Positions 13,877 through 56,800 of a DNA stretch of 64,000 nucleotides are shown here, in pieces. Each line of letters starts with the position of its first letter. Within the stretch, counting starts at the first letter, position 1. A model generated the notes under the pieces. The model worked only from the letters and a program-made list of their open reading frames with translations. It was not told the origin of the DNA and did no database searches. The stretch lies in assembly GCA_002269645.1 (NCBI GenBank), contig NIVC01000740.1, positions 1-64,000 of the forward strand, in the 5' to 3' direction. Source of the DNA: Macrostomum lignano. Its lineage: Eukaryota. A program made the position numbers and the translations under genes.

Positions 13877-16251
<2,375 letters not shown>

Positions 16252-17721: not shown

Positions 17722-29105
<11,384 letters not shown>

Positions 29106-29814: not shown

Positions 29815-32195
29815 GATGTCAGTGGTGCCTAGATGTTTGTCAGTGTTATCTAAGTGGATATCAGTAGTGCTTAGATGTTTGTCAGTGTTACCTAAGTGAA
29901 AATCAGTGGTGCCTAGATGTTTGTCAGTGAAAATTTTCACCTAAGTGAAAATCAGTGGTGCCCAGATGTTTGTCAGTGTTACCTAAGTGGATGTCAGTAG
30001 TGCCTAGATGTTTGTCAGTGTTACCTAAGTGGATATCAGTATAGTGCTTAGATGTGTGTCAGTGTTACCTAAGTGGATATCAGTATAGTGCTTAGATGTT
30101 TGTCAGTGTTACCTAAGTGGATATCAGTATAGTGTTTAGATGTTTGTCAGTGTTACCTAAGTGGATATCAGTATAGTGCCTAGATGTTTGTCAGTGTTAC
30201 CTAAGTGGATATCAGTATAGTGTTTAGATGTTTGTCACTGTTACCTAAGTGGATATCAGTATAGTGCTTAGATGTTTGTCAGTGTTACCTAAGTGGATAT
30301 CAGTATAGTGCTTAGATGTTTGTCAGTGTTACCTAAGTGGATGTCAGTAGTGCTTAGATGTTTGTCAGTGTTACCTAAGTGAATGTAAGTAGTGATTAGA
30401 TGTTTTTCAGTGTTACCTAAGTGGATATCAGTATAGTGCTTAGATGTTTGTCAGTGTTACCTAAGTGGATATCAGTATAGTGTTTAGATGTTTGTCAGTG
30501 TTACCTAAGTGGATATCAGTATAGTGCTTAGATGTTTGTCAGTGTTACCTAAGTGGATATCAGTATAGTGCTTAGATGTTTGTCAGTGTTACCTAAGTGG
30601 ATATCAGTATAGTGTTTAGATGTTTGTCAGTGTTACCTAAGTGGATATCAGTATAGTGCTTAGATGTTTGTCAGTGTTACCTAAGTGGATATCAGTATAG
30701 TGCTTAGATGTTTGTCAGTGTTACCTAAGTGGATATCAGTATAGTGCTTAGATGTTTGTCAGTGTTACCTAAGTGGATGTCAGTAGTGCTTAGATGTTTG
30801 TCAGTGTTACCTAAGTGAATGTCAGTAGTGATTAGATGTTTTTCAGTGTTACCTAAGTGGATATCAGTATAGTGCTTAGATGTTTGTCAGTGTTACCTAA
30901 GTGGATATCAGTATAGTGCTTAGATGTTTTTCAGTGTTACCTAAGTGGATATCAGTATAGTGCTTAGATGTGTGTCAGTGTTATCTAAGTGGAATCAGTA
31001 TAGTGCTTAGATGTTTGTCAGTGTTACCTAAGTGAATGTCAGTAGTGATTAGATGTTTTTCAGTGTTACCTAAGTGGATATCAGTATAGTGCTTAGATGT
31101 GTGTCAGTGTTACCTAAGTGGATATCAGTATAGTGCTTAGATGTTTGTCAGTGTTACCTAAGTGGATGTCAGTAGTGCTTAGATGTTTGTCAGTGTTACC
31201 TAAGTGAATGTCAGTAGTGATTAGATGTTTTTCAGTGTTACCTAAGTGGATATCAGTATAGTGCTTAGATGTGTGTCAGTGTTATCTAAGTGGAATCAGT
31301 ATAGTGCTTAGATGTTTTTCAGTGTTACCTAAGTGGATATCAGTATAGTGCTTAGATGTGTGTCAGTGTTATCTAAGTGGAATCAGTATAGTGCTTAGAT
31401 GTTTTTCAGTGTTACCTAAGTGGATATCAGTATAGTGCTTAGATGTTTGTCAGTGTTACCTAAGTGGATATCAGTATAGTGCTTAGATGTTTGTCAGTGT
31501 TACCTAAGTGGATATCAGTATAGTGCTTAGATGTGTGTCAGTGTTATCTAAGTGGATATCAGTAGTGCTTAGATGTGTGTCAGTGTTTTATAAGTGGATA
31601 TCAGTAGTGCTTAGATGTGTTGTCAGTGTTATCTAAGTGGATATCAGTAGTGCTTAGATGTGTTGTCAGTGTTACCTAAGTAGATATCAGTAGTGCTTAG
31701 ATGTGTTGTCAGTGTTATCTAAGTGGATATCAGTAGTGCTTAGATGTGTGTCAGTGTTTTATAAGTGGATATCAGTAGTGCTTAGATGTGTTGTCAGTGT
31801 TATCTAAGTGGATATCAGTAGTGCTTAGATGTGTGTCAGTGTTTTATAAGTGGATATCAGTAGTGCTTAGATGTGTTGTCAGTGTTACCTAAGTGGATAT
31901 CAGTAGTGCTTAGATGTGTTGTCAGTGTTACCTAAGTAGATATCAGTAGTGCTTAGATGTGTTGTCAGTGTTATCTAAGTGGATATCAGTAGTGCTTAGA
32001 TGTGTTGTCAGTGTTATCTAAGTGGATATCAGTAGTGCTTAGATGTGTTGTCAGTGTTACCTAAGTAGATATCAGTAGTGCTTAGATGTGTTGTCAGTGT
32101 TATCTAAGTGGATATCAGTAGTGCTTAGATGTGTTGTCAGTGTTATCTAAGTGGATATCAGTAGTGCTTAGATGTTTTTCAGTGAAGCCTAAGTG
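29815..32195. repeat. 42-44-bp minisatellite (agtgttacctaagtggatatcagtatagtgcttagatgtttgtc)n between the two collagen 5' ends
   Basis: About 55 copies; the unit looks like a dimer of ~21-22-bp subrepeats. Confidence 0.95.
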
Positions 32196-32788
32196 GATGA
32201 CAGTCGTACGAGCTATTAGAGGTGCTGCTAGGGTCGCCAAATTCGGGTTTGCAGCATCAAAGCGAGTGCAGAGGCACCAAATTCGAGTCATGATGATCAA
32301 ACCTCGCGTCTTCATCAAAATTTCTTCTCGGGAAAAATTTTTTGCACCACCCTTCTAGCCGAGAATTTGCAGATTCGTAACCCCTGAAAGCGTACAGCCA
32401 AAGTCCTGGTCAGCTGCTGGGCCACGACCTTTCCGCAGCCTGCAATCTCTCTGACAGTTCCAAGGCAAAGAATCCAAACCCCAACCATGGCTATCATCTG
32501 CGTGGCTGAGGGTTGGCCCCGGCCAGGGAACGAACCGGAATTAGACAACGCATGCACCGTAAGTACGGCGCGTCCGTTCCTTTGCTGTTCGCCCATCAGC
32601 CAAGCTTAACTTTTGTCTTCTTTCCTTCATTTACTTGGCCGAACCCGGGGCCTGGCTGGCAAAGCGGCTATACAGTACAGTTTGAACGCCTGGACAAACA
32701 GGCCGAGATCGGTTTCCTGAGTAAGCTACCTCGGACCGGAGGGTCACTTAAAGAAACAGGCTTGAGCTGGTAGGAGCCGGAATCGATA

Positions 32789-35700: not shown

Positions 35701-38700
35701 ACAATTCAGTAATCCTTCTATTGACCTTCACAGTACAATCCAGTAATCCTTCTATTGACCTACACATTACAATCCGTAATCCTTCTATTGACCTTCACAG
35801 TACAATCCAGTAATCCTTCTATTGACCTACACAGTACAATGCAGTAATCCTTCTATTGACCTACACAGTACAATCCGTAATCCTTCTATTGACCTTCACA
35901 GTACAATCCAGTAATCCTTCTATTGACCTACACATTACAATCCGTAATCCTTCTATTGACCTTCACAGTACAATCCAGTAATCCTTCTATTGACCTACAC
36001 AGTACAATCCGTAATCCTTCTATTGACCTTCACAGTACAATCCGTAATCCTTCTATTGACCTTCACAGTACAATCCAGTAATCCTTCTATTGACCTACAC
36101 AGTACAATCCGTAATCCTTCTATTGACCTTCCCAGTACAATCCGTAATCCTTCTATTGACCTACACAGTACAATCCGTAATCCTTCTATTGACCTTCACA
36201 GTACAATCCGTAATCCTTCTATTGACCTACACAGTACAATCTAGTAATATTTCTAGTGACCTACTGACCTCCAATGAATGCCTGCTCTAGTACTGCTCTA
36301 GTCAGTGACCAATTAAATCCTCAAATAGCCTGCTTCGATAAAATTTGAAGCAACTTGCAACTCGCAAACAAATCTCGTTGCCAGGGCGTGGCAGGACCAC
36401 CGGGTAACAACGGAACCGCCGGCTCCAAAGGCGAGAGAGGTTCTCGTGGCTACAAAGGTGACACAGGCGACAAAGGAAAGCAAGGAGTGTCGGTAAGATA
36501 CACACACAAACCGTATAGTAAGTGTTAATTACATGAGCTCACGGATTTTATAATTTTAAATCTCAACTCCAACCGAATCCCCCGTTCCGCAGGGTGAACT
36601 CGGCGAGCCTGGCAAGATAATTCGCTACCAAGCCCAGGGTCGGTCGCTGCCACCCGTCGCGTTTCCCGGGCCCAAGGGAGAGCCTGGGCCGAAGGGCCGG
36701 CCTGGCTATGACGGAATGCCCGGCGATACCGGCTTCAGCGGCCCTTTCGGCCCATCGGGTCCTCCTGTGAGTCATTTATCTTCATTTGCTTGTTGAGAAA
36801 AGACTGAAGGTTTCCACTTAAAACTTGTAGCTGAAATCAACTGATTGAAATCAAAGCCGTAGAGTTAGTACTGAGATAACAGATTATGAATGTACGAAAT
36901 CAGAGTTGTATACTAATTAGAGGGGGGGGGCTTAACCTTGTGGTGCCAGCAGCCCAAACTCGATTCCAAGTTGGATCTCGGCTTGGCTCTGCTCGTGCAA
37001 TTAACGCCATTGAAGTAAAACTCCCAAGACACAGTAAACTGTACATGCCTAATGACAAATAAAGTCAGGGCTGCTGTGCAGCCCTGTGTGAGTGTGTGCC
37101 TGTGCGTATGACTGCGTACGTATCCGCGCGCTTGTGTGCCTGCTCAGGGGAGTCGGCGGAATGGGCAGTAATGCCTCTCGCCGGTTGTGTGACAATGTCG
37201 CCTAAAGTGAGCTAAGCCAAAAAAGTCGACCCCGCCAACCAACACACTAAAAGTGCACCTTCCTTCCAAACTTTTTCATAACCAAGGGCCCGATGGGTCG
37301 CCCCGGAGCTAAAGGACTCTTCGGTCCGCCCGGCGAGAAAGGCGCCAAGGGTGCCACCGGATTTGCTGGTCAACGCGGCTTGCCCGGCTCGCGCGGACCC
37401 ACCGGCCCGACTGGTTTCGTTGGCGAAAGCGGCGCTCCTGGCGAGCTTGGCCGGCCAGGCGAGCGCGGCGCGCCCGGCACCGATGGCGGGCCCGGAGAGC
37501 GCGGCGCCACGGGCTACGACGGCGTCTCTGGCTTGCCCGGGCCCACTGGACTGCCCGGCTTCCAGGGTCGGCGCGGAGTCGTTGGCGCGTTCGGAAAACG
37601 CGGCGACACCGGCCGGAAAGGCGAGCGCGGCGCTATGGGCGACTCCGGACAGAAGGGCGACGTTGGCGACGTCGGACCGCACGGCTCGGCAGGTCGGGCC
37701 GGATCGCCCGGTCTGATCGGCGACACCGGTTCCAAAGGCTTGCCTGGCGCGGTTGGAGATCGGGGACCTTCGGGCGATCCGGGCCACATTGGCGAGAAGG
37801 TGACTGTTTGACTGGTGTTGATAAGAGTTTTCAACTCTCTTTAAGAGGTTACCTGGATGAGGTGTTTTCAAATTTCTTAAGAATTGTTTTACAGTTCAGT
37901 CGGTTCGGTCTGACGCTGTACTTTGGGTTTCCTTCTAGTGCTTCAGTTGGCATCTTCACCATCTAATTAGGCTCTAGATTACCAGATATGAAAAAGACAA
38001 AATCTCCCCAATCCCTGTCACCAACTAACCATCTGCAGGGCTTCAAAGGTCAGAGAGGCCACGAGGGACAACGCGGCGACATCGGCGAACCGGGTGGTCG
38101 CGGCGACGCCGGTCCAACTGGCCCGCTGGGTCCGAAGGGCGGCATTGGGGCCAAAGGCGTCAAGGGTCAACTTGGCGAGCCTGGCAGTGTAGGGAACATA
38201 GGAGCGCGCGGTTCACCAGGCAGTGACGGCGGCGCCGGAGCTCCCGGCCGCTATGGACGGCGCGGCAGCCGGGGCGACCCCGGCGCGATCGGAGCGCCAG
38301 GCGCAGCTGGGGCAGCTGGCGCTGTCGGGTACCCGGGCGACCCCGGCGAGAAAGGTCTGCAAGGCGAGGCTGGCGTCGCGGGCGAGCCAGGACATCCCGG
38401 CTGGCAGGGTGTCGAGGGTCCGATCGGTCTGGAGGGTCCGCCCGGCGCCCCGGGCACGGACGGTGACCCGGGAGAGCCCGGCTACTCTGGCAACGCAGGC
38501 TTCCGAGGTAGAGCCGGGTTCCGGGGCAGACGCGGCCAGACCGGACCGAGGGGTCCGCGCGGTCCGCCAGGTGTTAAGGGACACCAGGGACCCAAAGGCT
38601 ACAGGGGCGCGCGGGGACCCGAGGGTCGGCGTGGACCTCCTGGAAAGCGGGTAAGTTGAAATTTATGAGGAAGAGTTTCGATTTATCGTTGCATGATCTT

Positions 38701-40849
38701 TAAGACAGTTTCCTAAATACTCGTATAGCACACGATCTTAAGGACAGCGTCCCAAATACAGAATCTTCAAGGACAGCGTCCCAAATACAGCATCTTCAAG
38801 AACAGCGTCCCAAATACAGCATCTTCAAGGACAGCGTCCCAAATACAGCATCTTCAAGGACAGCGTCCCAAATACAGCATCTTCAAGAACAGCGTCCCAA
38901 ATACAGCATCTTCAAGGACAGCGTCCCAAATACAGAATCTTCAAGGACAGCGTCCCAAATACAGCATCTTCAAGGACAGCGTCCCAAATACAGAATCTTC
39001 AAGGACAGCGTCCCAAATACAGCATCTTCAAGGACAGCGTCCCAAATACAGCATCTTCAAGAACAGCGTCCCAAATACAGAATCTTCAAGGACAGCGTCC
39101 CAAATACAGCATCTTCAAGAACAGCGTCCCAAATACAGCATCTTCAAGAACAGCGTCCCAAATACAGCACACGATCTTTAATGACAGTTTCTGAACACAT
39201 TCTCTGGTCCTTCCAAAAGCCCGTATCTCTTGCAGACCGTATAAATCATGCAAAAAACCTCCCCAAACACCGGTCAGGCCCGGATCGCCAGCGACCCAGA
39301 CGACGGCTCCCAGGCTCTGATGCGCGACGCGGCGCCATTGCCGCAGCCGTCTCGATTCGTTGACGGCAGCGAAGCGGCCCCGGCGGTGACCTGCGCCCAG
39401 CTGTTCGCCGTCAGGCCGCAGCTCAGCACCGGCCGCTATTGGATCGACCCGAACGGCGGCCGACCAGCCGACGCAGTCCGTCTGCTCTGCCGACGAGACA
39501 CGCGGCAAACCTGCGTAGCTCCCAAGCGCAGCCGGGTCCAGACTGCGCCGCAGAAGAGCTTCCAAACTGGTGGCAGCAGCAGCTGGCTTGTTGAGGAGAC
39601 ACTTGGACAGGGAGATGTGAGTGGCAGTCGCGGACTCAAGGCTGTTTGGTTGCTAATTACAATCATTGGTATTCTTTTCTTACATTTTAAAGTTAGTGTT
39701 TGCTGGAGGCACCTGAGAGGTTGGGATACCAGTAATAGAATAAAAGCAGAAATGATGAGCAAGATAACTCTTACTGGCATCACAAGCCAACGATTTCAAG
39801 TGCAGTCACATTACTGCCCATTCCGCCGACTCCCCTGAGCAGGCACACAAAAGCGCGGATACGTACGCAGTCATGCACACAGGCACACACTCACACAGGA
39901 GTGTACAGTGGCCCTGACTTTATTTATCGTTAGGCATGTATACTACACTGTGTCTTGGTGTTGGCCCTCAAGGTCGTTAATTGCACGAGCAGAGCCAAGC
40001 CGAGATTCCAATCTAGCCCCTAATCAGTGTGACTGCACTTGGAATCGAGCCTGGGCCGCTGACACGTCATACCTACTAGATTTTTTTAACCGCCTATTTG
40101 GCGGTGGCAGAAACAGCTCATAGAAATTTATGAAAGCTTTTCTCTATCATTAATTCTCCCCCCAATTTGTCCAAACCTTCCGTCAGCTGCAATACGAGGT
40201 GGAGGGCAGCCAGCTGAATCATCTGAAGCTACGCAGCCTGACCGGCAGCCAGACTCTCACGCTGAACTGCAACGCATCGGCTGCTAGCGGTCGAATTGTT
40301 CAACTATTTGCCGACAGTGACGAAGTGCTGACACACGGAGGGACCGGCTCGTTGAGGCGGGCTGCCAGATACAGCATCGTTGGCGAGGGTTGCGAGGTAA
40401 GCGGCTTTCTACACTGTCAGCTGTTTGTTTATCTGTTCGCACCCATGAGGGCCAACCCCCAAGGCACAGGCAGTGCACATGCCTGACGATTGGAAAGTCA
40501 GGGCCGCGGTACATCCTATAGCTTGTGTGAGCGTGTGTGTGAGTGCGTCCTTGCGCTAAGGTGCCCGCAAGTGACAAACCAATTCACGCCAACCCATGTC
40601 AATTCACCTGACTCGCGAGCACAAACGCACGCAAGGTGTACATCGGCAATCTTTCACATCATCAAATCAAATAAGAACTACCAAATCTTTTATATTCCGC
40701 AGCAGACGGCCAACAAGGCTGCAGCAGCTTATCAGCAGCGACTGCTGGTGTCTGGCAGGTCGCGCCTGCTACCAGTCCGCGATCTGCAGTCGCCGGGTTT
40801 CCCTGCAACCGGAGGAGCACTGGAAGTTGGCGAAGTCTGTTTTCTGTGA
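32789..40849 (+). CDS. Fibrillar collagen alpha chain B (signal peptide, RTRR furin site, interrupted main helix, COLFI domain); 12 exons
   Basis: Exons 32789-32846, 32956-32981 (26-nt microexon), 33325-34416, 34829-34981, 35196-35609, 36385-36492, 36593-36766, 37287-37799, 38039-38650, 39278-39616, 40187-40396, 40703-40849 (NAGNAG acceptor). All are phase-consistent. COLFI motifs [18 protein letters not shown]...DA....C.....[31 protein letters not shown]. Confidence 0.92.
32993..33305. repeat. 30-bp minisatellite (gcaactccccattgagccatggcatctcaa)n
   Basis: About 10 copies filling collagen B intron 2. Confidence 0.95.
34521..34749. mobile_element. Dispersed short interspersed element, copy 1, flanked by 10-bp direct repeats (tgaagtcact)
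   Basis: tgaagtcact at 34511-34520 and 34750-34759; homologous to 37083-37208 and (inverted) 39809-39900. Confidence 0.6.
35626..36245. repeat. 33-34-bp minisatellite (cagtacaatccgtaatccttctattgacctaca)n
   Basis: About 18 copies starting about 16 nt after the donor. Confidence 0.95.
37083..37208. mobile_element. Dispersed short element, copy 2 (truncated)
   Basis: Near-identical to 34521-34646 and shares the same cctgtgtgag end. Confidence 0.6.
38735..39175. repeat. 29-bp minisatellite (cagcgtcccaaatacagcatcttcaagga)n
   Basis: About 15 copies. Confidence 0.95.
39809..39900. mobile_element. Dispersed short element, copy 3 (inverted, truncated)
   Basis: Reverse complement of the first ~92 bp of copy 1, with the same terminus. 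Confidence 0.6.
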
Positions 40850-41202
40850 TCACCTGGCCCGGCATGTGGCTGCTTGGAAGTGGGCAGGTGGAACTTCTTT
40901 ATTAAAATGATTGCATAAACTGACTGTTTTATTAATCAATAGAAATTTTCAACTTTATATTGAATAAATCGAACTAATACTTGAGTATTTAGCACTGAAA
41001 AATCAGTTTTAACACATTGAACTACTACTTTCGTATTGCTTGGAAAGAATTTCGATGCATTAATTACACCGAAATCAGTCACTATTCGCTTCATTAGTTT
41101 CCGAGAAAATCCATGCCGACTAATGACTACCGGACGGCATCTGACGCTTTTTTCTTTTTAGTGCTTTTCTAGTCTTTAACGAAGCAGGGTTGAGTCTTTT
41201 AC

Positions 41203-41385
41203 ATTACAGCGTATCGATCAGTCTTATCAGTTTCACAGCGTATCGATCAGTCTTATCAGTTTTACAGCGTATCGATCAGTCTTATCAGGTTTACAGCGTA
41301 TCGATCAGTCTTATCAGTTTTACAGCGTATCGATCAGTCTTATCAGTTTTACAGCGTATCGATCAGTCTTATCAGTTTTACAGCG
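41203..41385. repeat. 29-bp minisatellite (acagcgtatcgatcagtcttatcagtttt)n
   Basis: About 6 copies. Confidence 0.95.
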
Positions 41386-42065
41386 TCAGCAGCAGCACCT
41401 CCTGCACTGTCGGTCGTCGTCGCTTCCATTATCGTGGAGGACTCTTTGAAGCTTAGCAGCTTGGCACCGATGTTTGGGCTGGGCTGGCGTTTCGTTACCA
41501 AAATGGAAAAAAAGACGTGAAAACTCGAATAAAAAATTGCAGAAAGTTTGCGTTTCAAACTTTCAGGCGTTTATTTAAATAATTTGTCACCACTAACGTT
41601 AAAAAGAAAAAAATACATTTTTATTCCAAGTCATTTTCAACCGGTGATAGACAAAAATACAGGATTCTGGAACAAAAGTCAAGTAAAATATTTTCATTGC
41701 AACCAAATATGACAGATTTGACACGAATTTAGAACTTAATAAATAAAAAATACGCATTTTCAATTTAATCTTTAATAAGTCTCATTGCAGAGCTATTAAA
41801 GATTAGATTAATAAATTTGCCACCACAAAACTCTGTCTACTCTAAACCCTCGCATTCTCGTGTGTTCCGGAAGTCATCTTTTCGAAATTTAAACTAACTA
41901 ACATCATTAAGTCGCATAGAGACACATACATAGTATCTGTCTTTTCAAAAACCGCTTCTATTTTTACTACAAACCAAAATTTGAAAATTTGCAAAAAGAA
42001 AATTTCAAAAGCAACAGGCCTATTCGTTGAATTCTTAGAACTTTGGACATTCAGATCTGATTCAG

Positions 42066-42530
42066 TCAGTTCAGTGAATTCCCTCTTGACATACGACGAG
42101 CCAACTGCAAGCGTCGCTCCTCCCACTGCATGTCCTGCTGGTGCTCAAGCGCGTCCATCTCCAGATTGTGCTGCCGCGCCAGAGCTCGCTTCGGCACCAC
42201 CCACAGCGGGTAGGCGGCGCCGCACAGTTCACAGCGGATCTGCAGAGATCGTCGTAGCCAATTGGTGACGCAGTCGGCGTGTGCGCTGCCAACACTGCCG
42301 CGGCAGTTGCAGAGATTGTTCAACAGAGGCTGATTATTGTCGTCCGCGCTGGAGCTTCTGCAGATGCGGCATCTGTTGTCATCGGATTGCGCGTTTGCAA
42401 CTGTCGTCGCAGTCTTGGTTGAACTGGACCTGATTGTCTTTGGCGGAGATCTACTGCGATCTCTGGCTGTTGTTGCTGTTGTTGCTGACGAGCGAGATCG
42501 ATTATTCGTGGCGTTGCTCTCGTTGGCCAT
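42066..42530 (-). CDS. RINGv (C4HC3, MARCH-type) zinc-finger protein without transmembrane segments
   Basis: CRICR...LCNCRGSVGSAHADCVTNWL......CELC is the RING-CH pattern. ATG at 42530 lies 27 nt after a ttacag acceptor. Single exon of 154 aa. Confidence 0.75.
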   Translation of the reverse strand: MANESNATNNRSRSSATTATTARDRSRSPPKTIRSSSTKTATTVANAQSDDNRCRICRSSSADDNNQPLLNNLCNCRGSVGSAHADCVTNWLRRSLQIRCELCGAAYPLWVVPKRALARQHNLEMDALEHQQDMQWEERRLQLARRMSRGNSLN

Positions 42531-42966
42531 TTTCTTTTTCTTGTTGGTGTTGGCTATCTGTAAGCTAAAGATAGACGCCTGCATCAATTCATGAATGAAA
42601 GCAAAAAGATTTATACAATGCTCACCGGTGACTTTTGTCTGTGGTCATAGCTGTTCTTACGTATTCCTTGAATGCAAGGAGTTCTATAATTAGCATCTGG
42701 AGTGGAAACGAGTTTTTCAGTTTTAACAATAGATCTTATATAATATCTATGCTTTGCCACGCTCCTATTTCGCTGCAGCTTCATTGGTGGGACGCCTCCA
42801 ACTGATGTCCACTGGGCCGACTGCTGTTTGGTCTCTGGGTCGAAACTGTCGATCCAGGATTCATCACCACTGACGATTTCCCAGACCGAGTGAGTCTGAG
42901 CAGCCACCTTTGCTCCTCCGTCAGGTGATGAGATTGTTGTGTGCGTATGCACAAATAGAGTACATC
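42418..42966. repeat. 549-bp direct repeat, copy 1
   Basis: No mismatch with 44931-45479 seen by eye. Confidence 0.95.
42770..42960 (-). mobile_element. Degenerate mariner transposase remnant (second copy about 45280-45500)
   Basis: IVSGDESWIDSFDPETKQQSAQW matches the mariner IVTGDE.W...Y.PE.K.QS..W motif. HHLTEEQR lies upstream in a shifted frame. Confidence 0.65.
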
Positions 42967-44930
42967 TTGACTTACTTGACTTAGCTGCAGGGCGGTCCGA
43001 AGACGCAGCGGGGAGGCGAGCGTCGCCCATTCCGCTAATCCCTGAAAGACCCGCATAGGCTAGGGCGCGGGGCCGGTCAGGGAGGTCTGCCGGTCCTGTC
43101 TGCAGTGTTGTCTTCGGTGGGGAAGACGGAGGCTCGCTTGGTGGCCCGGAGGAACCGGATGAGCCGTGGGATGTTCTCGGGCCGGCAAACGTCGTCCAGG
43201 GACGGGTTGGGCCCGAGGTGGTTGAGCCGGTCTCGGTTGAAGGCCGGGCAGTAGCAGACGAAGTGCATGGCATCTTCATTCTCGAGGCTGCAGAAGGGGC
43301 AGAGTTCACTCCGGCGAACACATCGGAGGAAGCAGTGCCTGGCAAAGCAACCGTGACCTGTGAAGGTCATAGTGAGAGCGCGGATATCTTTTCGATTTTG
43401 ATTCAAAAGGATTCTCCGCAGCTTGAGGGACGGATTGGGCACTGCCGCACGAGATTGGCGGCAGTTGGAGATACCATCCCATCTGCGCAAGTGCAGGATG
43501 TCCGCCCAGTCGTTAATCTGACGATTAATGACTGTGGCGGGGATGGGGGCCAGGGGCACGGGGCCAAGGGGCGAGCCGGAACAGCCCGCCTTAGCGAGGG
43601 AGTCGGCGAGCTCGTTACCTTTGAAGCCGGCGTGTCCTGGGATCCACGTGAGCCGGACGGTGTTCCTCCGAGCCAGCTTGTTGAGCTGCCCGATACAGTC
43701 GCGGACTGTTCGGGAGTTCGTAGTGGTGTGACACAGGGCCTGTAAAGCGGCCTGGCTGTCAGAGTGGAAGAAGATTCTTCTGTCCTTGAAGTCCTTGCGG
43801 TGGAGCTCAGCTGCACAGGAGCTGATGGCAAGGACTTCATTCTGGAAGACGCTGGAGAGTCTGCCAGTGTGTTGGGCGTGAGTAGCAATCACGCGGCCGT
43901 TGATAAGGATGCAGACTCCAAAGCCGGATAAACCGTCTTTGGAGGATCCGTCAGTGAAGCAGTGAACCTCCTGAGGGGCCCAGCTGTCGTTGGCGTTCTC
44001 CCTGGAGGGGATCGTGACCTTGAAGCGTTGGTAGAGGTTGAGGGAGCGCGGTTCAGCGTCCGAAAGGACAGCCGCACTCCCACTCTCCTCCAGAACTTTA
44101 AGGCACAGGTCAGAGTGCGGCAGGAGCTTGCGCTTCGCCATCGCTCTTTGTGGCTTGAAGCTAACACCAGCCTCGATGAGCCGGCGGGTGGTTTTAGCAG
44201 CCTCGCGACGGACAAAGATGTCCAGAGGCGGGAGGCAGAGAAAGGCGTTGAGGCCGTCAAAGGGAGCAGAGAGCGGGGCATTCAGGATCATGCGGCACGC
44301 ACGTCCCTGCACCTTTTTGAGGGCTTCGTGGCAGGTTTTAATCTGCAAGGCGCTGGTCCAGACCAGGCCGGCGTATGTAACGGCCGGTCGGACCATTGCG
44401 GTATAGATCCACCAGAGACGCTTTGGGGTGAGGCCCCAGGTGGTGCCGACGGCTCTGCGCAGCTGCGCAAGAATCGCGAGGGCTTTTTTGGTTTTGGCCT
44501 GGACGTGGGTGGACCAGCTCAGCCGGTGGTCCAGCGTAACGCCGAGACACTTGGTTTGCTTGCAGGATGGAATTTCCACCCCGTAAAGCTTTAGTGGGCG
44601 AATACGCCAGTTTACCCTGCTGGTGAACATGATCGCGACAGTTTTGGTCTCGGAGAGCCTGAGGCCGCACCTGTCCGCCCAACGTTCAGCAGAGCGAATG
44701 AAGTTTTGCAAAAGATCTCTAAGGGTTTCAGGTGACGGTCCGGATGCCACGGCTGTGACATCATCGGCGTAACCGACCTTGAGGATGGGGTCAAGATGGC
44801 TGTCCTGGAGGAGCTCATCGATGACCATGTTCCAGAGAACTGGAGAGAGGACACCGCCCTGGGGGCTGCCTTTGCAGACGGTTACCGTCCGTTGGTGGCC
44901 CAACAGGTGTGCGGTGGCAGTACGGTGGCT
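42967..44930 (-). mobile_element. 5'-truncated non-LTR retrotransposon (RT-RNase H-CCHC; R1/Loa-like, I group)
   Basis: Open frame 44930-43077: GSPQGGVLSPVLWN, YADD, KCLGVTLD..LSW, RNase H (FTDGS, NEVLAI, SDSQAAL, WIPGHAGFKGNELADSLAK), C-terminal CPFC...EDAMHFVCYCP. Short 3' UTR ends in (TAAGTCAAG)2. Confidence 0.92.
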
Positions 44931-45479
44931 GTTGAACTGGACCTGATTGTCTTTGGCGGAGATCTACTGCGATCTCTGGCTGTTGTTGCTGTTGTTGCTG
45001 ACGAGCGAGATCGATTATTCGTGGCGTTGCTCTCGTTGGCCATTTTCTTTTTCTTGTTGGTGTTGGCTATCTGTAAGCTAAAGATAGACGCCTGCATCAA
45101 TTCATGAATGAAAGCAAAAAGATTTATACAATGCTCACCGGTGACTTTTGTCTGTGGTCATAGCTGTTCTTACGTATTCCTTGAATGCAAGGAGTTCTAT
45201 AATTAGCATCTGGAGTGGAAACGAGTTTTTCAGTTTTAACAATAGATCTTATATAATATCTATGCTTTGCCACGCTCCTATTTCGCTGCAGCTTCATTGG
45301 TGGGACGCCTCCAACTGATGTCCACTGGGCCGACTGCTGTTTGGTCTCTGGGTCGAAACTGTCGATCCAGGATTCATCACCACTGACGATTTCCCAGACC
45401 GAGTGAGTCTGAGCAGCCACCTTTGCTCCTCCGTCAGGTGATGAGATTGTTGTGTGCGTATGCACAAATAGAGTACATC
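44931..45479. repeat. 549-bp direct repeat, copy 2 (includes a duplicated RINGv acceptor and start codon at 45043)
   Basis: Same sequence as 42418-42966. Confidence 0.95.
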
Positions 45480-45820
45480 ACTTTCCCACTTTGTGCATGC
45501 GAAAACTTATTGCCACCCGCTCGTAATCAACAAGATGTGCTTGCAAACAGCTTACTAGTAGGCGTGCATCAGCCAAATGGGTGATTAGAAAAAACAATTA
45601 CTAGAATATTTCCAAAAATCCAGACAATTTATGTAATTAGTAAATCACGGACATTTATCATTTAACTATATATAAATCTATTTGCACTTGAATCGTACTA
45701 CTAACAGTAGAGGTAGACGACGTATAAAATTGCAGACAAACTTCGTTGGGCATAGCTAATACATGCATGGCCATGAGTCGACTCGCGTGACTTCAGCTTG
45801 TCTGTCTGTCTATTTCATCG

Positions 45821-46246: not shown

Positions 46247-46987
46247 ATGTCAAAGACTTTGCTGCTAATTCTGTCACTGAGACTTCTGCTGCAGGCTCAT
46301 TGCCAAGGCTCACTGACTAACATCTATGCGAAAATTACTGGATTCCTGTGTGTCAAGCCCGAGTTTACAAGAAATTTCTCGAGCTTTGGCACTGTTCTCG
46401 AGTGCTCGATGCTCTGCAGCATGGAGCCGCGCTGTCAGGCGTTCAGCCTGGCTGACGGTCCGTGCCAGCTGTTCGTGTTCGACAAGTGCAGCAAGTCGGT
46501 GAGGGACTGCGGCTGCTCCAGAAGAGGCCGGGTGTTTGTGAAGCAGCAGCCGGGACTCGAGCCGGGTGCGCTGTGTCCGTCCGACTTCGGAGACGACCAC
46601 TGCGGAGTGAGGTACAAGCTGTTCAATGCGGTTAACACCTGGGCAGTGCAGAGACAGAGGTGCGAGTCGGAGAGCGGTCTGGTGATCATGGCGGACGTGA
46701 TCGACAGCGCCGAGCTGGCTGCCATCGGACAAGTTTACAGCACGAAGGCTGGCGGCGTCGCTATGTGGGTCGGCGGCTTCCAGACTCCGGGCAGTGCGGA
46801 GCCCAACGGAGGCTGGCGCTGGGTGGCCTGCAACATCAGCTTTGACGCCAGCCTGTGGGCCACCATCGAGCCCAATAACTACGGTGGCAGCGAGGACGCA
46901 GTTTTCGCCAGTACTGTCTTGGGAGACGCCCCGAATTCCAACACCAACAGAGCCGGCCTGTGCGAGTGCCTGTCGCCCTTTGACTGA
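46247..46987 (+). CDS. Secreted PAN/apple + C-type lectin domain protein (paralog 1, intronless)
   Basis: Signal peptide; C..LC..EPRCQAFS....CQL (PAN); CP..F....C...YKLF....TW...RQRC, MWVGG, WRW, W...EPNN...ED, LGD, LCEC (CTLD). Confidence 0.85.
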   Translation: MSKTLLLILSLRLLLQAHCQGSLTNIYAKITGFLCVKPEFTRNFSSFGTVLECSMLCSMEPRCQAFSLADGPCQLFVFDKCSKSVRDCGCSRRGRVFVKQQPGLEPGALCPSDFGDDHCGVRYKLFNAVNTWAVQRQRCESESGLVIMADVIDSAELAAIGQVYSTKAGGVAMWVGGFQTPGSAEPNGGWRWVACNISFDASLWATIEPNNYGGSEDAVFASTVLGDAPNSNTNRAGLCECLSPFD

Positions 46988-48057
46988 CAAACGGAAAAAG
47001 GAGAATATTATGAAAGCATCTTTTTAGCACTGCGTGCCCGGGTGAAACTTTTACAATTGGAAACATTTTCTGAGTTGGGTTAAATACCCTTTGTTGTTGG
47101 TAAATTGTGGCATAGAGTTCGAACTTTATAAGAAATATGCACGATTGCGTGTGGCACGGCTGTTTTGAGACTGAAGCAAAAAATAAAAATAACGAATTCA
47201 AATTTGTTTTGCAAGCAATATTTGTCTGATGGCTCTTGCACTGTTTCAGTTTCTTGCGTTTGTCGAAACACGTATGTAAGGAGTTTGTTGGAAACGTTTT
47301 AAAGAGTGACTGGCGTCAATATTGCACCGTATTCAGGTATTGATTAGGAGTAAGGGGAGCAAGAGGTACGGGAGAAACGCAATAAATGAGTCTAGGAATG
47401 CACTTTCTACTACTATGAGTAAAACAACTGAATACAAAGATGGCGCATGACAACATATTACGCATTTATTTTTTGCAAACAGTAAGAAAAGGCGCAATTG
47501 AATTGAATTATTGCAATTACAACAGCAGTATGCCCGCTCGTCAGCTGCTTACACAAACGGTTTTTTCAGGCACTATCAGTTTAATTGGCATTTCTGAAAA
47601 TATGCTGAAGCTCACAGTAACTCTCTTCACGATCTTGTAACAGATATCCCTCCTTGAGAGATGATAATTATCGTCAACTCGCAACGCAATTCATGATCGA
47701 TGAAAGCTTGCTAAAGTCAATCAAGCGCGTACTTAAGGGAAGTTGGAGCTGAGTCAATAGCCTTTGGATGCAAGACAGGTGCTGCAGACTCAGACAGCCC
47801 TGTCAATCGTATTACTCAAGCTGACAGCAGCAGACGAACAGGTGCAAGATTTTTTTATTCAAAATTCAATATTTATTGCGACAATCCGGCCCGATCTGTC
47901 GCCTTGTTGATTCTGCCGGAGCCCAGGTTCTCAAATTGACTTTATTTAGTCGCTTCTGGCGAGCGGCAAGCCAACCGAGCCCGGCCCCTGCGGTTCTGTG
48001 CTTGCCGGAGCTCTGAAATTATTGAAAGCTTGGAAGCTGGCTCGAACGAGCTACCGA

Positions 48058-48792
48058 ATGGCATCTGTTAACACTGCGTCGCTTCTGCTGCTGCTGTTGA
48101 GCTCACCCGGTGTGTCGTCAGGCCAAATGTTCCACGCCATGTCTGGCTTTCTCTGCATCCGGCCCGAGTTTACGAGAAACGAGCCTCGAGCCAGGTCGGA
48201 CATCGAGTGCTCGCTGCTCTGCACCATGAAGCCGCGCTGTCAGGCGTTCAGCCTGGCTGACGGTCCGTGCCAGCTGTTCGTGTTCGACAAGTGCAGCAAG
48301 TCGGTGAGGGACTGCGGCTGCTCCAGGAGAGGCCGGGTGTTTGTGAAGCAGCAGCTGGGACTCGAGCCGGGTGCGCTGTGTCCGTCCGACTTCGGAGACG
48401 ACCACTGCGGAGTGAAGTACAAGCTCTTTAATGCGACCAACACCTGGGCAGTGCAGAGACAGAGGTGCGAGTCGGAGAGCGGTCTGGTGATCATGGCGGA
48501 CGTGATCGACAGCGCCGAGCTGGCTGCCATCGGACAAGTTTACAACACGAAGGGTGGCGGCGTCGCTATGTGGGTCGGCGGCTTCCAGACTCCGGGCAGT
48601 GCGGAGCCCAACGGAGGCTGGCGCTGGGTGGCCTGCAACATCAGCATTGATGCCAGCCTGTGGGCCAGCGGAGAGCCCAATAACTTAGACGGCATCGAAG
48701 ATGTAGTTTACGCCCACATTGCCTTGGGAGACGCCGCTCAGATATACACCTCGAAAGACGGCCTGTGCGAGTGCCTGTCGCCCTTTGGCTGA
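48058..48792 (+). CDS. Secreted PAN/apple + C-type lectin domain protein (paralog 2, intronless)
   Basis: ATG at 48058 (MASVNTASLLLLLLSS signal peptide). Same architecture, with a central block nearly identical to paralog 1. Confidence 0.85.
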   Translation: MASVNTASLLLLLLSSPGVSSGQMFHAMSGFLCIRPEFTRNEPRARSDIECSLLCTMKPRCQAFSLADGPCQLFVFDKCSKSVRDCGCSRRGRVFVKQQLGLEPGALCPSDFGDDHCGVKYKLFNATNTWAVQRQRCESESGLVIMADVIDSAELAAIGQVYNTKGGGVAMWVGGFQTPGSAEPNGGWRWVACNISIDASLWASGEPNNLDGIEDVVYAHIALGDAAQIYTSKDGLCECLSPFG

Positions 48793-49199: not shown

Positions 49200-51236
49200 A
49201 TGGAGTCCAGAAGTCAGCCATCCACCTGCACGTCCAACACTGCAAACTCAGGCTCCACCCTGTACTCAATACCGGAGCAAGATCTGCAGGCCTGCCCGGA
49301 GACACCCGAACACCTGGCCGTGTGTCTAATTGGCGTCATTAGCCAGCGACTGCATCAGCTGGGCTTCCAACTGCCTGACAGTCTGCGGCTTGGACAGCAG
49401 AAGGCATGCAAAGCGGCGATGCTCACGTCAGGAGACGACGTGCTGCAGCTGTTCAAGTGAGGAGGCCCAACGGACGAGCGGTGCAGGGGGATCGTCCTCT
49501 GCTTGATGAGAAATGTCAAAACGACTCTATCATTGGGGCATTGGTGTTGTATGGACTGTGACATTGGGGCATTGGTGTTGTATGGACTGTGATATTGGGG
49601 CATTGGTGTTGTATGGACTGTGACATTGGGGCATTGGTGTTGTATGGACTGTGACATTGGGGCATTGGTGTTGTATGGACTGTGACATTGGGGCATTGGT
49701 GTTGTATGGACTGTGACATTGGGGCATTGGTGTTGTATGGACTGTGACATTGGGGCATTGGTGTTGTATGGACTGTGACATTGGGGCATTGGTGTTGTAT
49801 GGACTGTGACATTGGGGCATTGGTGTTGTATGGACTGTGACATTGGGGCATTGGTGTTGTATGGACTGTGACATTGGGGCATTGGTGTTGTATGGACTGT
49901 GACATTGGGACATTGGTGTTGTATGGACTGTGACATTGGGACATTGGTGTTGGATGGACTGTGACATTGGGGCATTGTTGTTGTATGGACTGTGACATTG
50001 GGGCATTGGTGTTGTATGGACTGTGACATTGGGACATTGGTGTTGTATGGACTGTGACATTGGGGCATTGGTGTTGTATGGACTGTGACATTGGGGCATT
50101 GGTGTTGTATGGACTGTGACATTGGGGCATTGGTGTTGTATGGACTGTGACATTGGGACATTGGTGTTGGATGGGGTCTGACATTGGTGTTAGATTAGAT
50201 AGCTTCGGACGATCTAAAATTTCGAGGTTATTCAGCTTCAAAGTTGCAAAAAGATTCCCTTTCGACAGAAGGAAATTTCGAGCTTACAAAATGCCCTCTC
50301 CCCGATTCACGCAGGCAGCTACTTGACGATTACGAGCGTCTGCGCGCCGAGCGCGACGACATGCGGGCCGCCGAGAGTTTGCAGCGCCACGAGATCGGCC
50401 GTCTGAGCCGCCAGGCCGCCAGCCTCCAGCAGCAGCTGCTGGCGAAGGACAAGAAGCTGGCCGACGTCGAGTACCGCCTTGAAGAGGCCGGCAAAAGTGC
50501 AGAAAATTTGCGCGCCGAGGCGCGACGCGAGGTGCAGAAAGCGCGCCTAGCAGCATCGGAGGGGCGCCGGCTGGCTGAGACAGCGCAGCACAGGGAGCGC
50601 CGGACGGAGTTGGAGCTGTGGGAGGCCAGGCAGCGGCTGGAACGAAACGGCCAGCCAGCGCTCTGGCGCTCCGGCCGGCTGCGTCACCGAGGCGGCGGCC
50701 TCCGCGGCGGCTCCCGCGGCGGCGGCGGCTTTCCGTCGTCGGCTTCGACAAGGAAAAAAGCGCCGCCGCCCGCTGCCAGCCACGCCGTGCCGGCAGGTTC
50801 TGACCTGTTCGAGACCATCGACCTGCGGATTCCGATGATGCCGCCCCAGAAGCAACAGACACAGCAGCAACAGCAAGATCAACAGCAACAATTATCTTTC
50901 TTGTCGCTGCTCTCCTCGGAGCCCCACGCGCCGCCGCTCGTGACGCCGCGGCCAGGCAGGAACCGCAGCCTGCCAGCGATGCGGCAGCAGGTCTGGTACC
51001 GGGTGCCGCCAGCAGAGTCGGCAGACCAGCAAGACGACATGTGCAGCGACCCGACATCAGCTGGCGACCTGTCTGCCGTCAGCCTGGCCGAGACCATCGA
51101 CGCGACCAGGATCTGCTGCCAAGAACGGCTGATTGACTCCGCTGACTCGGCGACAGTGGCCTCGTCCTCGTCTGGCTCGAGGACTCACGGGACTTCGTCA
51201 AGTTCGAATAGTGCAAGACGGTACCGCGGTCGCTAA
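49200..51236 (+). CDS. Coiled-coil protein with disordered C-terminus, 2 exons (weak resemblance to ADIP/SSX2IP family)
   Basis: Exons 49200-49456 and 50315-51236 joined by a phase-2 intron (FK|QLLDD). About 110 aa of heptad coiled coil. The family call rests only on recalled SQRLHQLGF/ERRTELELWEARQRL similarity. Confidence 0.65.
49530..50170. repeat. 31-bp minisatellite (cattggggcattggtgttgtatggactgtga)n
   Basis: About 20 copies in the intron. Confidence 0.95.
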
Positions 51237-53800: not shown

Positions 53801-56800
53801 TCAAGCGTCCCAGGGCTGGAAGAACAGCATATAGTTAACCAGCTGGTAGGGCAGCGGCAGGGAGCGCACCGCCTGCTGGTAGGGCACAGCCTCTTTAGCA
53901 GTCTCCATCAGCCGCCGGTGCAGCCGCAGCCGGCACAGCTGTCTCAGACTCCTCGGCCGCTGGCCAAGCGCTTGAATCTCGCTCAGCCTCAGAAAGCGCG
54001 GATCCTCCCGTTTCATTTTGGCCACAAAGTCGGACACAATCCGGTCGGCCAGAGGCTGCTGGGTGCAGTGGAACAGCAGGGTGAGCAGGCGCCACGCGTG
54101 CGGACCGTGCAACAGCCGGCAGCCAGACTCTCTGCACTGATGCAGGAACAGATTGAGAGGCTGGGTGCTGCAGCTGCGCAGGTAAATTGAGCTCTGCGAG
54201 TGCACAATGGTTGGCTCGGCTGAGTACGGCTCCAGGTTGGGGTCAGCGCCGGCCTGGATGAGGGTGAGCACCCACTTGCTGATGTACCTCACGTCCGTGA
54301 TGTCGTCAACCACCTGGAGGGCAATACATTTGTGTCACAGTGTGCATTTAAACTTGTCATTCTATTCACAAAAACTGTTCAAACAAGCTTATAATAACCA
54401 TCCACCGGCATTACATACCAATCCAAATCCCTAGTTAACCATTCACACATCCCCAGTTACCCATTCACACATCCCCACTTACCCATTCAGACATACACCA
54501 GTTACCCATTCACACATACACCAGTTACCCGTTCACACATACACCAGTTAACAATTCACACAGACACCGGCTACCCATCCACACATACACCAGTTACCCA
54601 TTCACACATACACCAGTTACCCATTCACACATACACCAGTTAACAATTCACACATACATAAGTTACCCATTCACACATACACCGGCTAACCATTCACACA
54701 TACAACAGTTACCAATTCACACAGACACCGGCTACCCATTCACACATACACCAGTTACCCATTCACACATACATAAGTTACCCATTCACACATACATAAG
54801 TTACCCATTCACACATACACCGGCTAACCATTCACACATACAACAGTTCCCCACTCACACATACATAAGTTACCAATTCACACAGACACCGGCTAACCAT
54901 TCACACATACACCAGTTACCCATTCACACATACATAAGTTACCCATTCACACATACACCGGCTAACCATTCACACATACAACAGTTCCCCACTCACACAC
55001 ACAACAGTTACCAATTCACACAGACACCGGCTAACCATTCACACATACAACAGTTCCCCACTCACACACACAACAGTTACCAATTCACACAGACACCGGC
55101 TAACCATTCACACATACGCAGTTACCCATTCACACAGCCGAAGTTAGTTACCCATTCACACATCCGCAGTTACCCATTCACACATCCGCAGTTACCCATT
55201 CACACAGCCGAAGTTAGTTACCCATTCACACAGCCGCAGTTACCCATTCACACATCCGCAGTTACCCATTCACACACACAACAGTTATCCATTCACACAT
55301 ACTCGTACAGCAGTTAACCATTCACACATCCGCAGTTACCCATTCACACATCCGCAGTTACCCATTCACACAGCCGAAGTTAGTTACCCATTCACACAGC
55401 CGCAGTTATCCATTCACACAGCCGAAGTTAGTTACCCATTCACAAATCCGCAGTTACCCATTCACAAATCCGCAGTTACCCATTCACACATCCGCAGTTA
55501 CCCATTCACACATGCAACAGTTACCAATTCACACATCCACAGTTACCCATTCACACATCCGCAGTTACCCATTCACACATACAGCAGTTAACCATTCACA
55601 CATCCGCAGTTACCTATTCACACAGCCGAAGTTAGTTACCCATTCACACATCCGCAGTTACCTATTCACACAGCCGAAGTTAGTTACCCATTCACACATC
55701 CTCAGTTACCCATTCACACATCCGCAGTTACCCATTCACACAGCCGCAGCTACCCATTCACACATCCGCAGTTACCCATTCACACAGCCGAAGTTACCCA
55801 TTCACACAGCCGAAGTTAGTTACCCATTCACACATCCGCAGTTACCCATTCACACAGCCGAAGTTACCCATTCACACAGCCGAAGTTAGTTACCCATTCA
55901 CACAGCCGCAGTTACCCATTCACACATCCGCAGTTACCCATTCACACAGCCGAAGTTACCCATTCACACAGCCGAAGTTAGTTACCCATTCACACAGCCG
56001 CAGTTACCCATTCACACATCCGCAGTTACCCATTCACACAGCCGAAGTTACCCATTCACACAGCCGAAGTTAGTTACCCATTCACACAGCCGCAGTTACC
56101 CATTCACACATCCGCAGTTACCCATTCACACAGCCGAAGTTACCCATTCACACAGCCGAAGTTAGTTACCCATTCACACAGCCGAAGTTAGTTACCCATT
56201 CACACAGCCGAAGTTACCCATTCACACATCCGCAGTTACCCATTCACACATCCGCAGTTACCCATTCACACAGCCGCAGTTACCCATTCACACAGCCGCA
56301 GTTACCCATTCACACAGCCGCAGTTACCCATTCACACATCCGCAGTTACCCATTCACACAGCCGAAGTTAGTTACCCATTCACACAGCCGAAGTTAGTTA
56401 CCCATTCACACAGCCGAAGTTACCCATTCACACATCCGCAGTTACCCATTCACACAGCACGCACCCTAGCCAGCGACAGGAACTCGGACAGGGCGTGGCC
56501 GCGGCCGCCGTGCATGAACGGCAGGCTGCCAGTCCGTCGGCTCCGTTCGTTCAATCGGAGCCCGTGCGACAGCAGCAGCCGCAGGGTTTCATCCAGGAAC
56601 TGCACGTTAAGCCGTTTGGCCTCGTCGTTGTGAACCAGGGGCCCGATGCCGACTGGGGTGCCCATGTTCAGAATGTTCTCGGCCAAGGCGGCCACCAGGG
56701 ACGTGCAGTTGCCCTGTCAGAATGGTGAAGCAATGCCAATGGGAGTCATCTCATCGTTAGCATATTTTGAACCCGAAACCCAAAAATCCTAGACATTCCC

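What the first reader, a model, noticed from the sequence alone, without database searches (positions are those of the whole stretch)
42418..45479. Non-LTR retrotransposon flanked by a 549-bp apparently perfect direct duplication
Seen: a 1964-bp 5'-truncated RT-RNase H element (3' tail (TAAGTCAAG)2 abutting 42966; RT frame cut exactly at 44930) lies precisely between two 549-bp copies with no visible mismatch. Established: TPRT target-site duplications are usually only a few to about 20 bp. The duplicated block carries the RINGv gene's acceptor, ATG and first about 37 codons, creating a second start that runs into retroelement sequence upstream of the intact gene. Inference: a very recent insertion with a giant TSD (widely staggered second nick or repair-coupled insertion), a route to retrotransposon-driven duplication of gene 5' ends.
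Basis: partly seen in the sequence, partly recalled or inferred. Interest (0 to 1): 0.75.

Follow-up and report, generated by a model that had tools for sequence, protein, structure and literature searches.

The report
Retrotransposon insertion with 549-bp target duplication
A young, 5'-truncated LINE-type retrotransposon in the flatworm Macrostomum lignano lies between two identical 549-bp copies of its target, and a second contig of the same assembly keeps the uninterrupted site; this is a clean natural case of a rare but already documented "giant target-site duplication".

Summary
Window 42418-42966 and 44931-45479 are identical (549/549). The 1964 bp between them is a 5'-truncated non-LTR retrotransposon on the minus strand: an open 617-codon RT/RNase H frame, a 110-nt 3' UTR and a (TAAGTCAAG)2 tail.

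The window is M. lignano assembly Mlig_3_7, contig NIVC01000740.1. A second contig of that assembly, NIVC01002731.1, carries the exact empty site: one 549-bp block, no element, and both flanks contiguous. The block is therefore host DNA that was duplicated on insertion. It is not part of the element and not a transduction.

A 59%-identical relative on a metagenome contig ends in the same CCCTGCAGC(TAAGTCA..)n terminus, so the 3' end here is intact, as target-primed reverse transcription (TPRT) predicts.

The best explanation is TPRT with the second-strand break 549 bp from the first nick.

This is not a new kind of event:
- L1 makes TSDs over 100 bp, up to 5.3 kb, in cultured cells.
- Dualen LINEs in Chlamydomonas make duplications with a median of 900 bp.
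- R9 elements make a 126-bp TSD.

Still missing are read-level support and TSD lengths for other copies of the family; I could not obtain either.

The parts
42418..42966 (-). TSD copy A (549 bp). It abuts the element's 3' tail and is continuous with the rest of the intact RINGv gene.
   Evidence: Identical to 44931-45479 and identical to the single copy in the empty-site contig L001 9619-10167.
42967..44930 (-). 5'-truncated non-LTR retrotransposon remnant, 1964 bp (I/LOA-like, RT plus RNase H).
   Evidence: Open frame, with Pfam RVT_1 and RNase_H. Closest proteins are from M. lignano (74%). Nearest named relative is Lian-Aa1. Absent from L001.
42967..42984 (-). 3' terminal tandem repeat (TAAGTCAAG)2. 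The last G is shared with the target.
   Evidence: The same CCCTGCAGC(TAAGTCA..)n terminus occurs in relative L003 2487-2518.
42967..43076 (-). 3' UTR with a conserved predicted stem-loop.
   Evidence: Alignment and consensus fold with L003: 18 pairs, 2 of them with compensatory changes, from only two sequences.
43077..44930 (-). ORF2 remnant: 617 codons plus stop, with no internal stops.
   Evidence: The alignment to P0016 starts at aa 2 against aa 535, so at least 534 aa (endonuclease and N-terminal RT) are missing.
44532..44897 (-). C-terminal half of the reverse transcriptase domain, including YADD.
   Evidence: Pfam RVT_1, E=1.1e-13, profile positions 109-205 of 205.
43581..43973 (-). RNase H domain.
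   Evidence: Pfam RNase_H, E=8.6e-13.
44931..45479 (-). TSD copy B (549 bp). It abuts the truncated 5' end of the element and is continuous with the native upstream flank.
42066..42584 (-). Intact RINGv (RING-CH) gene. The deposited CDS is 172 aa starting at ATG 42584; an alternative ATG lies at 42530.
   Evidence: Pfam RINGv, E=8e-12. Called gene in GCA_002269645.1.
44882..45043 (-). Duplicated gene start: ATG 45043, 37 native codons, a junction codon, then 15 out-of-frame codons in the element and a stop.
   Evidence: ORF 44882-45100, plus frame arithmetic.

Best explanation
A LINE-type (APE-class, RT plus RNase H, I/LOA-like) retrotransposon inserted by target-primed reverse transcription into the 5' end of a RINGv gene of Macrostomum lignano.

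Inferred sequence of events:
1. The plus strand was nicked between what are now 45479 and 45480.
2. Its 3'-OH (...GTACATC) primed cDNA synthesis on the element's (TAAGTCAAG)n RNA tail.
3. Reverse transcription stopped, or the RNA ended, inside the RT coding region. This produced the 5' truncation at 44930.
4. The other strand was broken 549 bp away, at the 42417|42418 position, instead of the usual few to about 20 bp.
5. Filling in the two overlapping 549-nt single strands duplicated the target.

Shown here: the structure, the exact empty site, the intact family-specific 3' end, and the clean 5' truncation.

Inferred: the order of events, and what made the distant second break. It could be the element's own endonuclease, an unrelated nick, or a replication- or transcription-associated end.

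Consequence (inferred): the native upstream region now drives a dead-end 53-codon start that runs into the element. The intact gene sits 2.5 kb further downstream and keeps only about 380-440 bp of its own upstream sequence.
For: - Perfect 549-bp direct repeat exactly bounding the element.
- The empty site in contig NIVC01002731.1 has one block and exact flanks. The insertion is the only difference between the two contigs from 40368 to 45629.
- The element has an RT/RNase H open frame. Relatives carry an APE-type endonuclease, PF14529.
- The 3' terminus matches that of an independent relative, so the tail is the true element end at the junction.
- Homology runs to the first codon at the 5' junction, so there is no filler.
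- No N runs. Both junctions are internal to a 259-kb contig from a 130x PacBio/Canu assembly.
- There is precedent for TSDs over 100 bp to several kb made by TPRT elements.
Against: - No reads were available, so the tandem structure rests on one assembly of a very repetitive, partly redundant genome.
- Pilon polishing could have erased small differences between the copies.
- This is one insertion only. No other copy of the family is in the window, and none could be fetched. So neither the nick-site preference nor the family's usual TSD length is known.
- The sequence outcome is the same for several ways of producing the second break.
Confidence: 0.8

Rival explanations
1. Assembly artefact: a false tandem duplication created by misjoining reads from the two near-identical haplotypes or homeologs, or by a chimeric read.
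For: The genome is highly repetitive and the assembly has 180 Mb of redundant blocks at 95% identity or more. The window itself is crowded with minisatellite arrays. No read-level check was possible.
Against: - Both novel junctions (block end to tail, and truncated RT to block start) join sequences with no similarity to what they replace. An overlap error between an empty haplotype and a normally inserted one cannot create them.
- There is no gap or N between the copies.
- The 2.5-kb structure is far shorter than PacBio reads at 130x.
- The assembler kept the empty version as a separate contig.
Confidence: 0.07
2. The element end was not joined after a distant second-strand nick. Instead the RT, or a repair polymerase, switched templates.

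- One version: at a stalled fork, the nascent strand returned to the DNA template 549 bp behind (MMBIR/FoSTeS-like).
- Another version: the RT jumped from the element RNA to the nascent RINGv pre-mRNA, copied it back past the nick, and the cDNA re-annealed.

Either gives the same block-element-block product.
For: - The element and the gene are in the same orientation, and the duplicated block is the transcribed 5' end of the gene. The RNA-switch version requires both.
- 5'-truncated L1 insertions show broad, repair-dependent junction outcomes and small tandem duplications.
- PMC5223499 itself proposes replication or repair ends as the source of distant second breaks.
Against: - Same orientation is expected half the time by chance.
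- The RNA version needs an unspliced nascent transcript whose 3' end sits at codon 38.
- Nothing in the sequence, such as microhomology, filler or a missing intron, favours this over a simple distant nick.
Confidence: 0.1
3. A 549-bp tandem duplication existed first, and the element later inserted exactly at its junction. Alternatively, the block is a transduced part of the element.
For: None specific. Both would give two block copies next to the element.
Against: - The related contig has a single block.
- An independent insertion would have to hit the junction base exactly and make no TSD of its own.
- The block is contiguous host DNA on both sides in L001 and contains the start of the host gene. 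In the window it also joins each flank exactly, so it is not element sequence.
- There is no second tail after the block.
Confidence: 0.02

Closest known systems
Human LINE-1 insertions with large TSDs (Gilbert 2002/2005 and Symer 2002, as cited in Servant et al. 2017, PMC5223499)
   Same: A TPRT insertion, often 5'-truncated with an intact 3' end, flanked by a direct duplication of more than 100 bp and up to several kb. It is attributed to a second-strand break far from the first nick, and its potential to duplicate exons has been noted.
   Different: Those are engineered L1 events in cultured, often repair-deficient, human cells, with poly(A) tails. This one is a spontaneous, apparently heritable insertion of an RNase H-bearing, repeat-tailed element in a flatworm.
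Dualen-4b_cRei LINE in Chlamydomonas mutation-accumulation lines (PMC9977147)
   Same: Spontaneous LINE insertions flanked by duplications of hundreds of bp (median 900 bp), interpreted as very long TSDs.
   Different: Dualen carries both RLE and APE endonucleases, which the authors suggest explains the long TSDs, and it does this in more than half of its insertions. Relatives of the element here show only the APE-type domain, and the family habit is unknown.
R9 rDNA-specific LINEs of bdelloid rotifers (Gladyshev & Arkhipova 2009, cited in PMC9977147)
   Same: A natural non-LTR element with an exceptionally long TSD of 126 bp.
   Different: R9 is site-specific with a fixed TSD length set by its endonuclease. 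This insertion is in a unique gene, and its TSD is four times longer.
LOA-clade elements such as Lian-Aa1 of Aedes
   Same: RT followed by RNase H and a C-terminal Cys/His motif. Lian-Aa1 is the best named hit (P0025, about 31% identity over 91% of the remnant).
   Different: The relationship is distant. No RT phylogeny was made, so clade membership is a lead only.

Membership tests
Non-LTR (LINE) retrotransposon, APE-type with RNase H (I/LOA group) | Reverse transcriptase domain | tested here: met
   Pfam RVT_1, E=1.1e-13; C-terminal half only, because of truncation.
Non-LTR (LINE) retrotransposon, APE-type with RNase H (I/LOA group) | RNase H domain downstream of RT | tested here: met
   Pfam RNase_H, E=8.6e-13, aa 320-450.
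Non-LTR (LINE) retrotransposon, APE-type with RNase H (I/LOA group) | APE-type endonuclease N-terminal to RT | tested here: inconclusive
   This copy lacks the region, with at least 534 aa missing. Relatives P0016 and P0035 carry PF14529.
Non-LTR (LINE) retrotransposon, APE-type with RNase H (I/LOA group) | No LTRs; a defined 3' end with a simple-repeat or A-rich tail | tested here: met
   The only repeat flanking the insert is the host block. The (TAAGTCAAG)n terminus is shared with relative L003.
LOA clade specifically | Placement within the clade in an RT phylogeny | not tested
   Only a best named hit to Lian-Aa1 at about 31% identity.
TPRT insertion with target-site duplication | Intact element 3' end at one junction and variable 5' truncation at the other | tested here: met
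TPRT insertion with target-site duplication | The direct repeat flanking the insert is single-copy and uninterrupted at the empty site, with no other rearrangement | tested here: met
   L001 has one block with exact flanks and 0 mismatches. The insertion is the only difference across 40368-45629.
TPRT insertion with target-site duplication | Endonuclease nick-site consensus at the first-strand nick | not testable with these tools
   Only one insertion with both flanks is available. Other copies could not be retrieved.
Long-TSD-producing LINE family (Dualen-like habit) | A large fraction of the family's insertions have TSDs over 50-100 bp | not testable with these tools
   The rest of the M. 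lignano genome could not be searched for this element.
3' or 5' transduction | The flanking block travels with the element and is followed by a second tail | tested here: not met
   The block is host DNA, contiguous with both flanks in L001 without the element. The tail motif occurs only at 42966-42984 on the element's strand.
Assembly false duplication | The copies are separated by a gap or contig end, or the junctions can be explained by haplotype overlap | tested here: not met
   No N in the window. The junction sequences are unrelated to the replaced flanks. Read support was not testable.

The most novel reading that the evidence does not exclude
This Macrostomum LINE family, which so far as seen has only an APE-type endonuclease, habitually places its second-strand break hundreds of bp away, as Dualen does in Chlamydomonas. 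It would then be a systematic generator of small tandem duplications, including duplicated gene 5' ends, in a neopolyploid flatworm genome. A more exotic version is that the duplicated copy was reverse-transcribed from the nascent host pre-mRNA after a template jump.
Probability: 0.12. Interest if true: 0.6.

Novelty: new member of a known kind. Interest (0 to 1): 0.3.

Why it matters
This is a clean, naturally occurring example of a LINE insertion that duplicated half a kilobase of its target, including a gene's start codon, with the filled and empty sites side by side in one assembly. It shows that long-TSD retrotransposition, best documented in cultured human cells and in one algal LINE, also occurs in a flatworm with an unrelated, RNase H-bearing, repeat-tailed element. 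Such events can create duplicated gene 5' ends. On its own it is one anecdote. It would matter more if a genome-wide survey showed that the family does this often.

Tried and rejected
- Exact-product look-ups returned nothing for the lectin-like genes, the RT ORF with two different starts, the 154-aa RINGv ORF and the chimeric 71-aa ORF. Only the deposited 172-aa RINGv product (P0047) was on record, and that led to the two contigs.
- Other copies in the window: BLASTN with the element and TBLASTN with eight relatives found none.
- Other copies elsewhere: a metagenome scan for the conserved 3' terminus found nothing. A protein-pattern scan gave 248 pattern hits, none confirmed. The collection does not contain the L003 contig. 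Family TSD lengths therefore could not be measured.
- My impression that the block holds a mariner-type transposase remnant (ORF 45124-45465) was not supported by Pfam at E<=10 or by a PDB sequence search. I dropped it.
- The bacterial promoter/terminator scan is irrelevant for a flatworm and was ignored.
- In-frame fusion of the gene start to RT was rejected: the frames differ by one base and the read-through stops after 15 codons.
- The paralog alignment did not resolve which ATG is the true start.

Full report
**Observation.** Window 42418-42966 and 44931-45479 are identical over 549 bases, and identity ends abruptly on both sides. BLAST of the block against the 64-kb window finds only these two copies, and the 1964-bp insert is unique in the window. 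There are no N runs. The described feature is therefore present at exactly the stated coordinates and cannot be chance.

**What the insert is.**
- On the minus strand, 44930 down to 43080 is one open frame of 617 codons, ending at the stop 43077-43079.
- Pfam finds only the C-terminal half of RVT_1 (profile positions 109-205 of 205) and then a complete RNase_H domain.
- A BLASTP alignment to a longer relative (P0016: APE-type endonuclease, RT and RNase H) starts at residue 2 of the remnant, opposite residue 535 of P0016. At least 534 residues of ORF2 and everything upstream are missing. The coding homology runs right up to the junction, with no filler.
- The closest proteins are Macrostomum lignano TE-derived gene models (74%, 63% identity). 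The nearest named element is Lian-Aa1 of Aedes, a LOA-type LINE, at about 31%. I call the element I/LOA-like. Clade membership was not tested by phylogeny.
- Downstream of the stop lie a 110-nt 3' UTR and the terminus CCCTGCAGC-TAAGTCAAG-TAAGTCAA(G).
- A 59%-identical relative on a JGI metagenome contig (L003) has a conserved 3' UTR with a predicted stem-loop and ends CCCTGCAGC-TAAGTCAAAG-TAAGTCAG-TAAGTCAA before unrelated flank. The short tandem repeat is therefore the family's true 3' end, and it is intact at the junction with block copy A.

**Where the window comes from, and the empty site.**
- The RINGv product as deposited (172 aa, P0047) is encoded on two contigs of GCA_002269645.1, the Mlig_3_7 assembly of M. 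lignano line DV1. L002 (NIVC01000740.1) is the window itself at 100% identity. L001 (NIVC01002731.1) is a second version of the locus.
- In L001 the sequences matching window 50001-44931 and 42966-35633 overlap by exactly 549 bp. L001 therefore has one block and no element.
- Base-by-base, the L001 block is identical to both window copies. Its left flank equals the window sequence left of copy A, and its right flank equals the window sequence right of copy B.
- With the insertion removed, the two contigs show no difference between 40368 and 45629. Further out they differ at about 0.4-1% and in minisatellite copy number.
- The published description of the assembly explains the two versions: 130x PacBio, Canu, Pilon polishing, and 180 Mb of redundant blocks at 95% identity or more, owing to the extra large chromosomes of DV1 (PMC5730564).
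- The block is thus ordinary host DNA duplicated together with the insertion.
- L001 could in principle be a revertant made by recombination between the two copies rather than the ancestral state. Either way the filled allele needs the same origin.

**Mechanism.** The geometry is that of a target-site duplication.
- The plus strand ends ...GTACATC at 42966 (originally 45479) and continues directly into the complement of the element's tail. That 3'-OH is the inferred primer for first-strand cDNA synthesis, with at most 1 nt of overlap with the tail repeat.
- cDNA synthesis ended inside the RT coding region.
- The other strand must have been open at the 42417|42418 position, 549 bp away, so that both 549-nt single strands were filled in.
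- Shown: the structure, the empty site, the intact 3' end and the clean 5' truncation. Inferred: the sequence of events and the agent of the second break.
- I put 0.8 on TPRT with a distant second-strand break as a real event, 0.07 on an assembly artefact, about 0.1 on template-switch variants (fork-associated, or onto nascent host RNA), and 0.02 on a pre-existing duplication or a transduction.
- The artefact is disfavoured because both novel junctions connect sequences that share nothing with the flanks they replace. The structure is also much shorter than the reads, and the empty version was assembled separately. No reads could be inspected, however.

**Effect on the gene.**
- The RINGv domain gene (Pfam RINGv) lies on the same strand as the element. 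Its start (ATG 42530, or 42584 as deposited) is inside the block, so the start is duplicated.
- The upstream copy keeps the native upstream region but reads 37 codons, a junction codon and 15 out-of-frame codons before a stop. It is not fused in frame to RT.
- The intact gene retains only 382-436 bp of its own upstream sequence before the element's tail.
- About 39% of M. lignano genes are trans-spliced, so the downstream copy might still be expressed from read-through transcripts. This is inference only, and the putative acceptor was not tested.

**Comparison with what is known.** Long TSDs are a documented, uncommon outcome of TPRT.
- L1 TSDs over 100 bp occur in under 10% of events recovered from HeLa cells. 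In NER-deficient cells they have a median of 1495 bp and reach 5.3 kb. The authors propose a distant second nick and note that exons could be duplicated (PMC5223499).
- L1 over-expression also yields small tandem duplications at insertion sites (PMC11702581).
- In Chlamydomonas mutation-accumulation lines, more than half of Dualen-4b insertions carry flanking duplications over 50 bp, with a median of 900 bp. The same paper cites the 126-bp TSD of rotifer R9 elements (PMC9977147).
- The present case adds a spontaneous example in a flatworm, for a different kind of LINE. It is a new member of a known kind.

**What could not be done.** No other copy of the family is in the window. Exact-product look-ups and two metagenome scans retrieved none. 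The family's usual TSD length and its nick-site preference therefore remain unknown. The perfect identity of the copies and the intact 617-codon frame suggest a recent event, but Pilon polishing may have homogenised near-identical sequence.

**Verdict.** Interest is modest (0.3). It would rise if a genome-wide survey showed that the family makes long TSDs habitually.

Noticed in passing
window 1-64000 (e.g. 56779-62452, 29825-32198, 14323-15791, 28296-29011): The window is crowded with minisatellite and microsatellite arrays: 29 TRF rows with score 300 or more, including a 26-bp unit x218, a 44-bp unit x55, (AGATAGAT)x184 and (AGTC)x179. These arrays account for the strong local GC-skew swings seen in the composition profile.
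   Followed up: partly
window 46247-46987 and 47998-48792 (+): Two tandem, intronless paralogous ORFs of 246 and 264 aa, about 92% identical at the DNA level over roughly 590 bp. Both are cysteine-rich with signal-peptide-like N-termini. The only Pfam match is a sub-threshold PAN_4 hit. Neither exact product is on record.
   Followed up: partly
window 42967-43076 (-) and L003 2417-2519: The element's 3' UTR is conserved with a 59%-identical relative and is predicted to form a stem-loop just upstream of CCCTGCAGC(TAAGTCA..)n. It is a candidate RT recognition structure of a 'stringent' LINE. With only two sequences, the covariation support is minimal.
   Followed up: partly
window 38735-39169 versus L001 13416-13850: The two contigs differ by several whole 29-bp repeat units in an array just downstream of a collagen-repeat ORF (37988-38659; Pfam Collagen, E=1e-32). 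This is minisatellite copy-number variation between the two versions of the locus.
   Followed up: no
window 45124-45465 (-), duplicated at 42611-42952: A 113-codon ORF inside the block contains a motif (ESWIDSFDPETKQQSAQW) that reminded me of mariner-family transposases. Neither Pfam (E up to 10) nor a PDB sequence search supports this, so it remains an unverified impression.
   Followed up: yes
window 49355-50241 (-): Long ORFs of 207-268 aa here are simply translations of a 31-bp tandem array (49531-50187, 21 copies), read in three frames as a 93-bp period. They are probably not genes.
   Followed up: no
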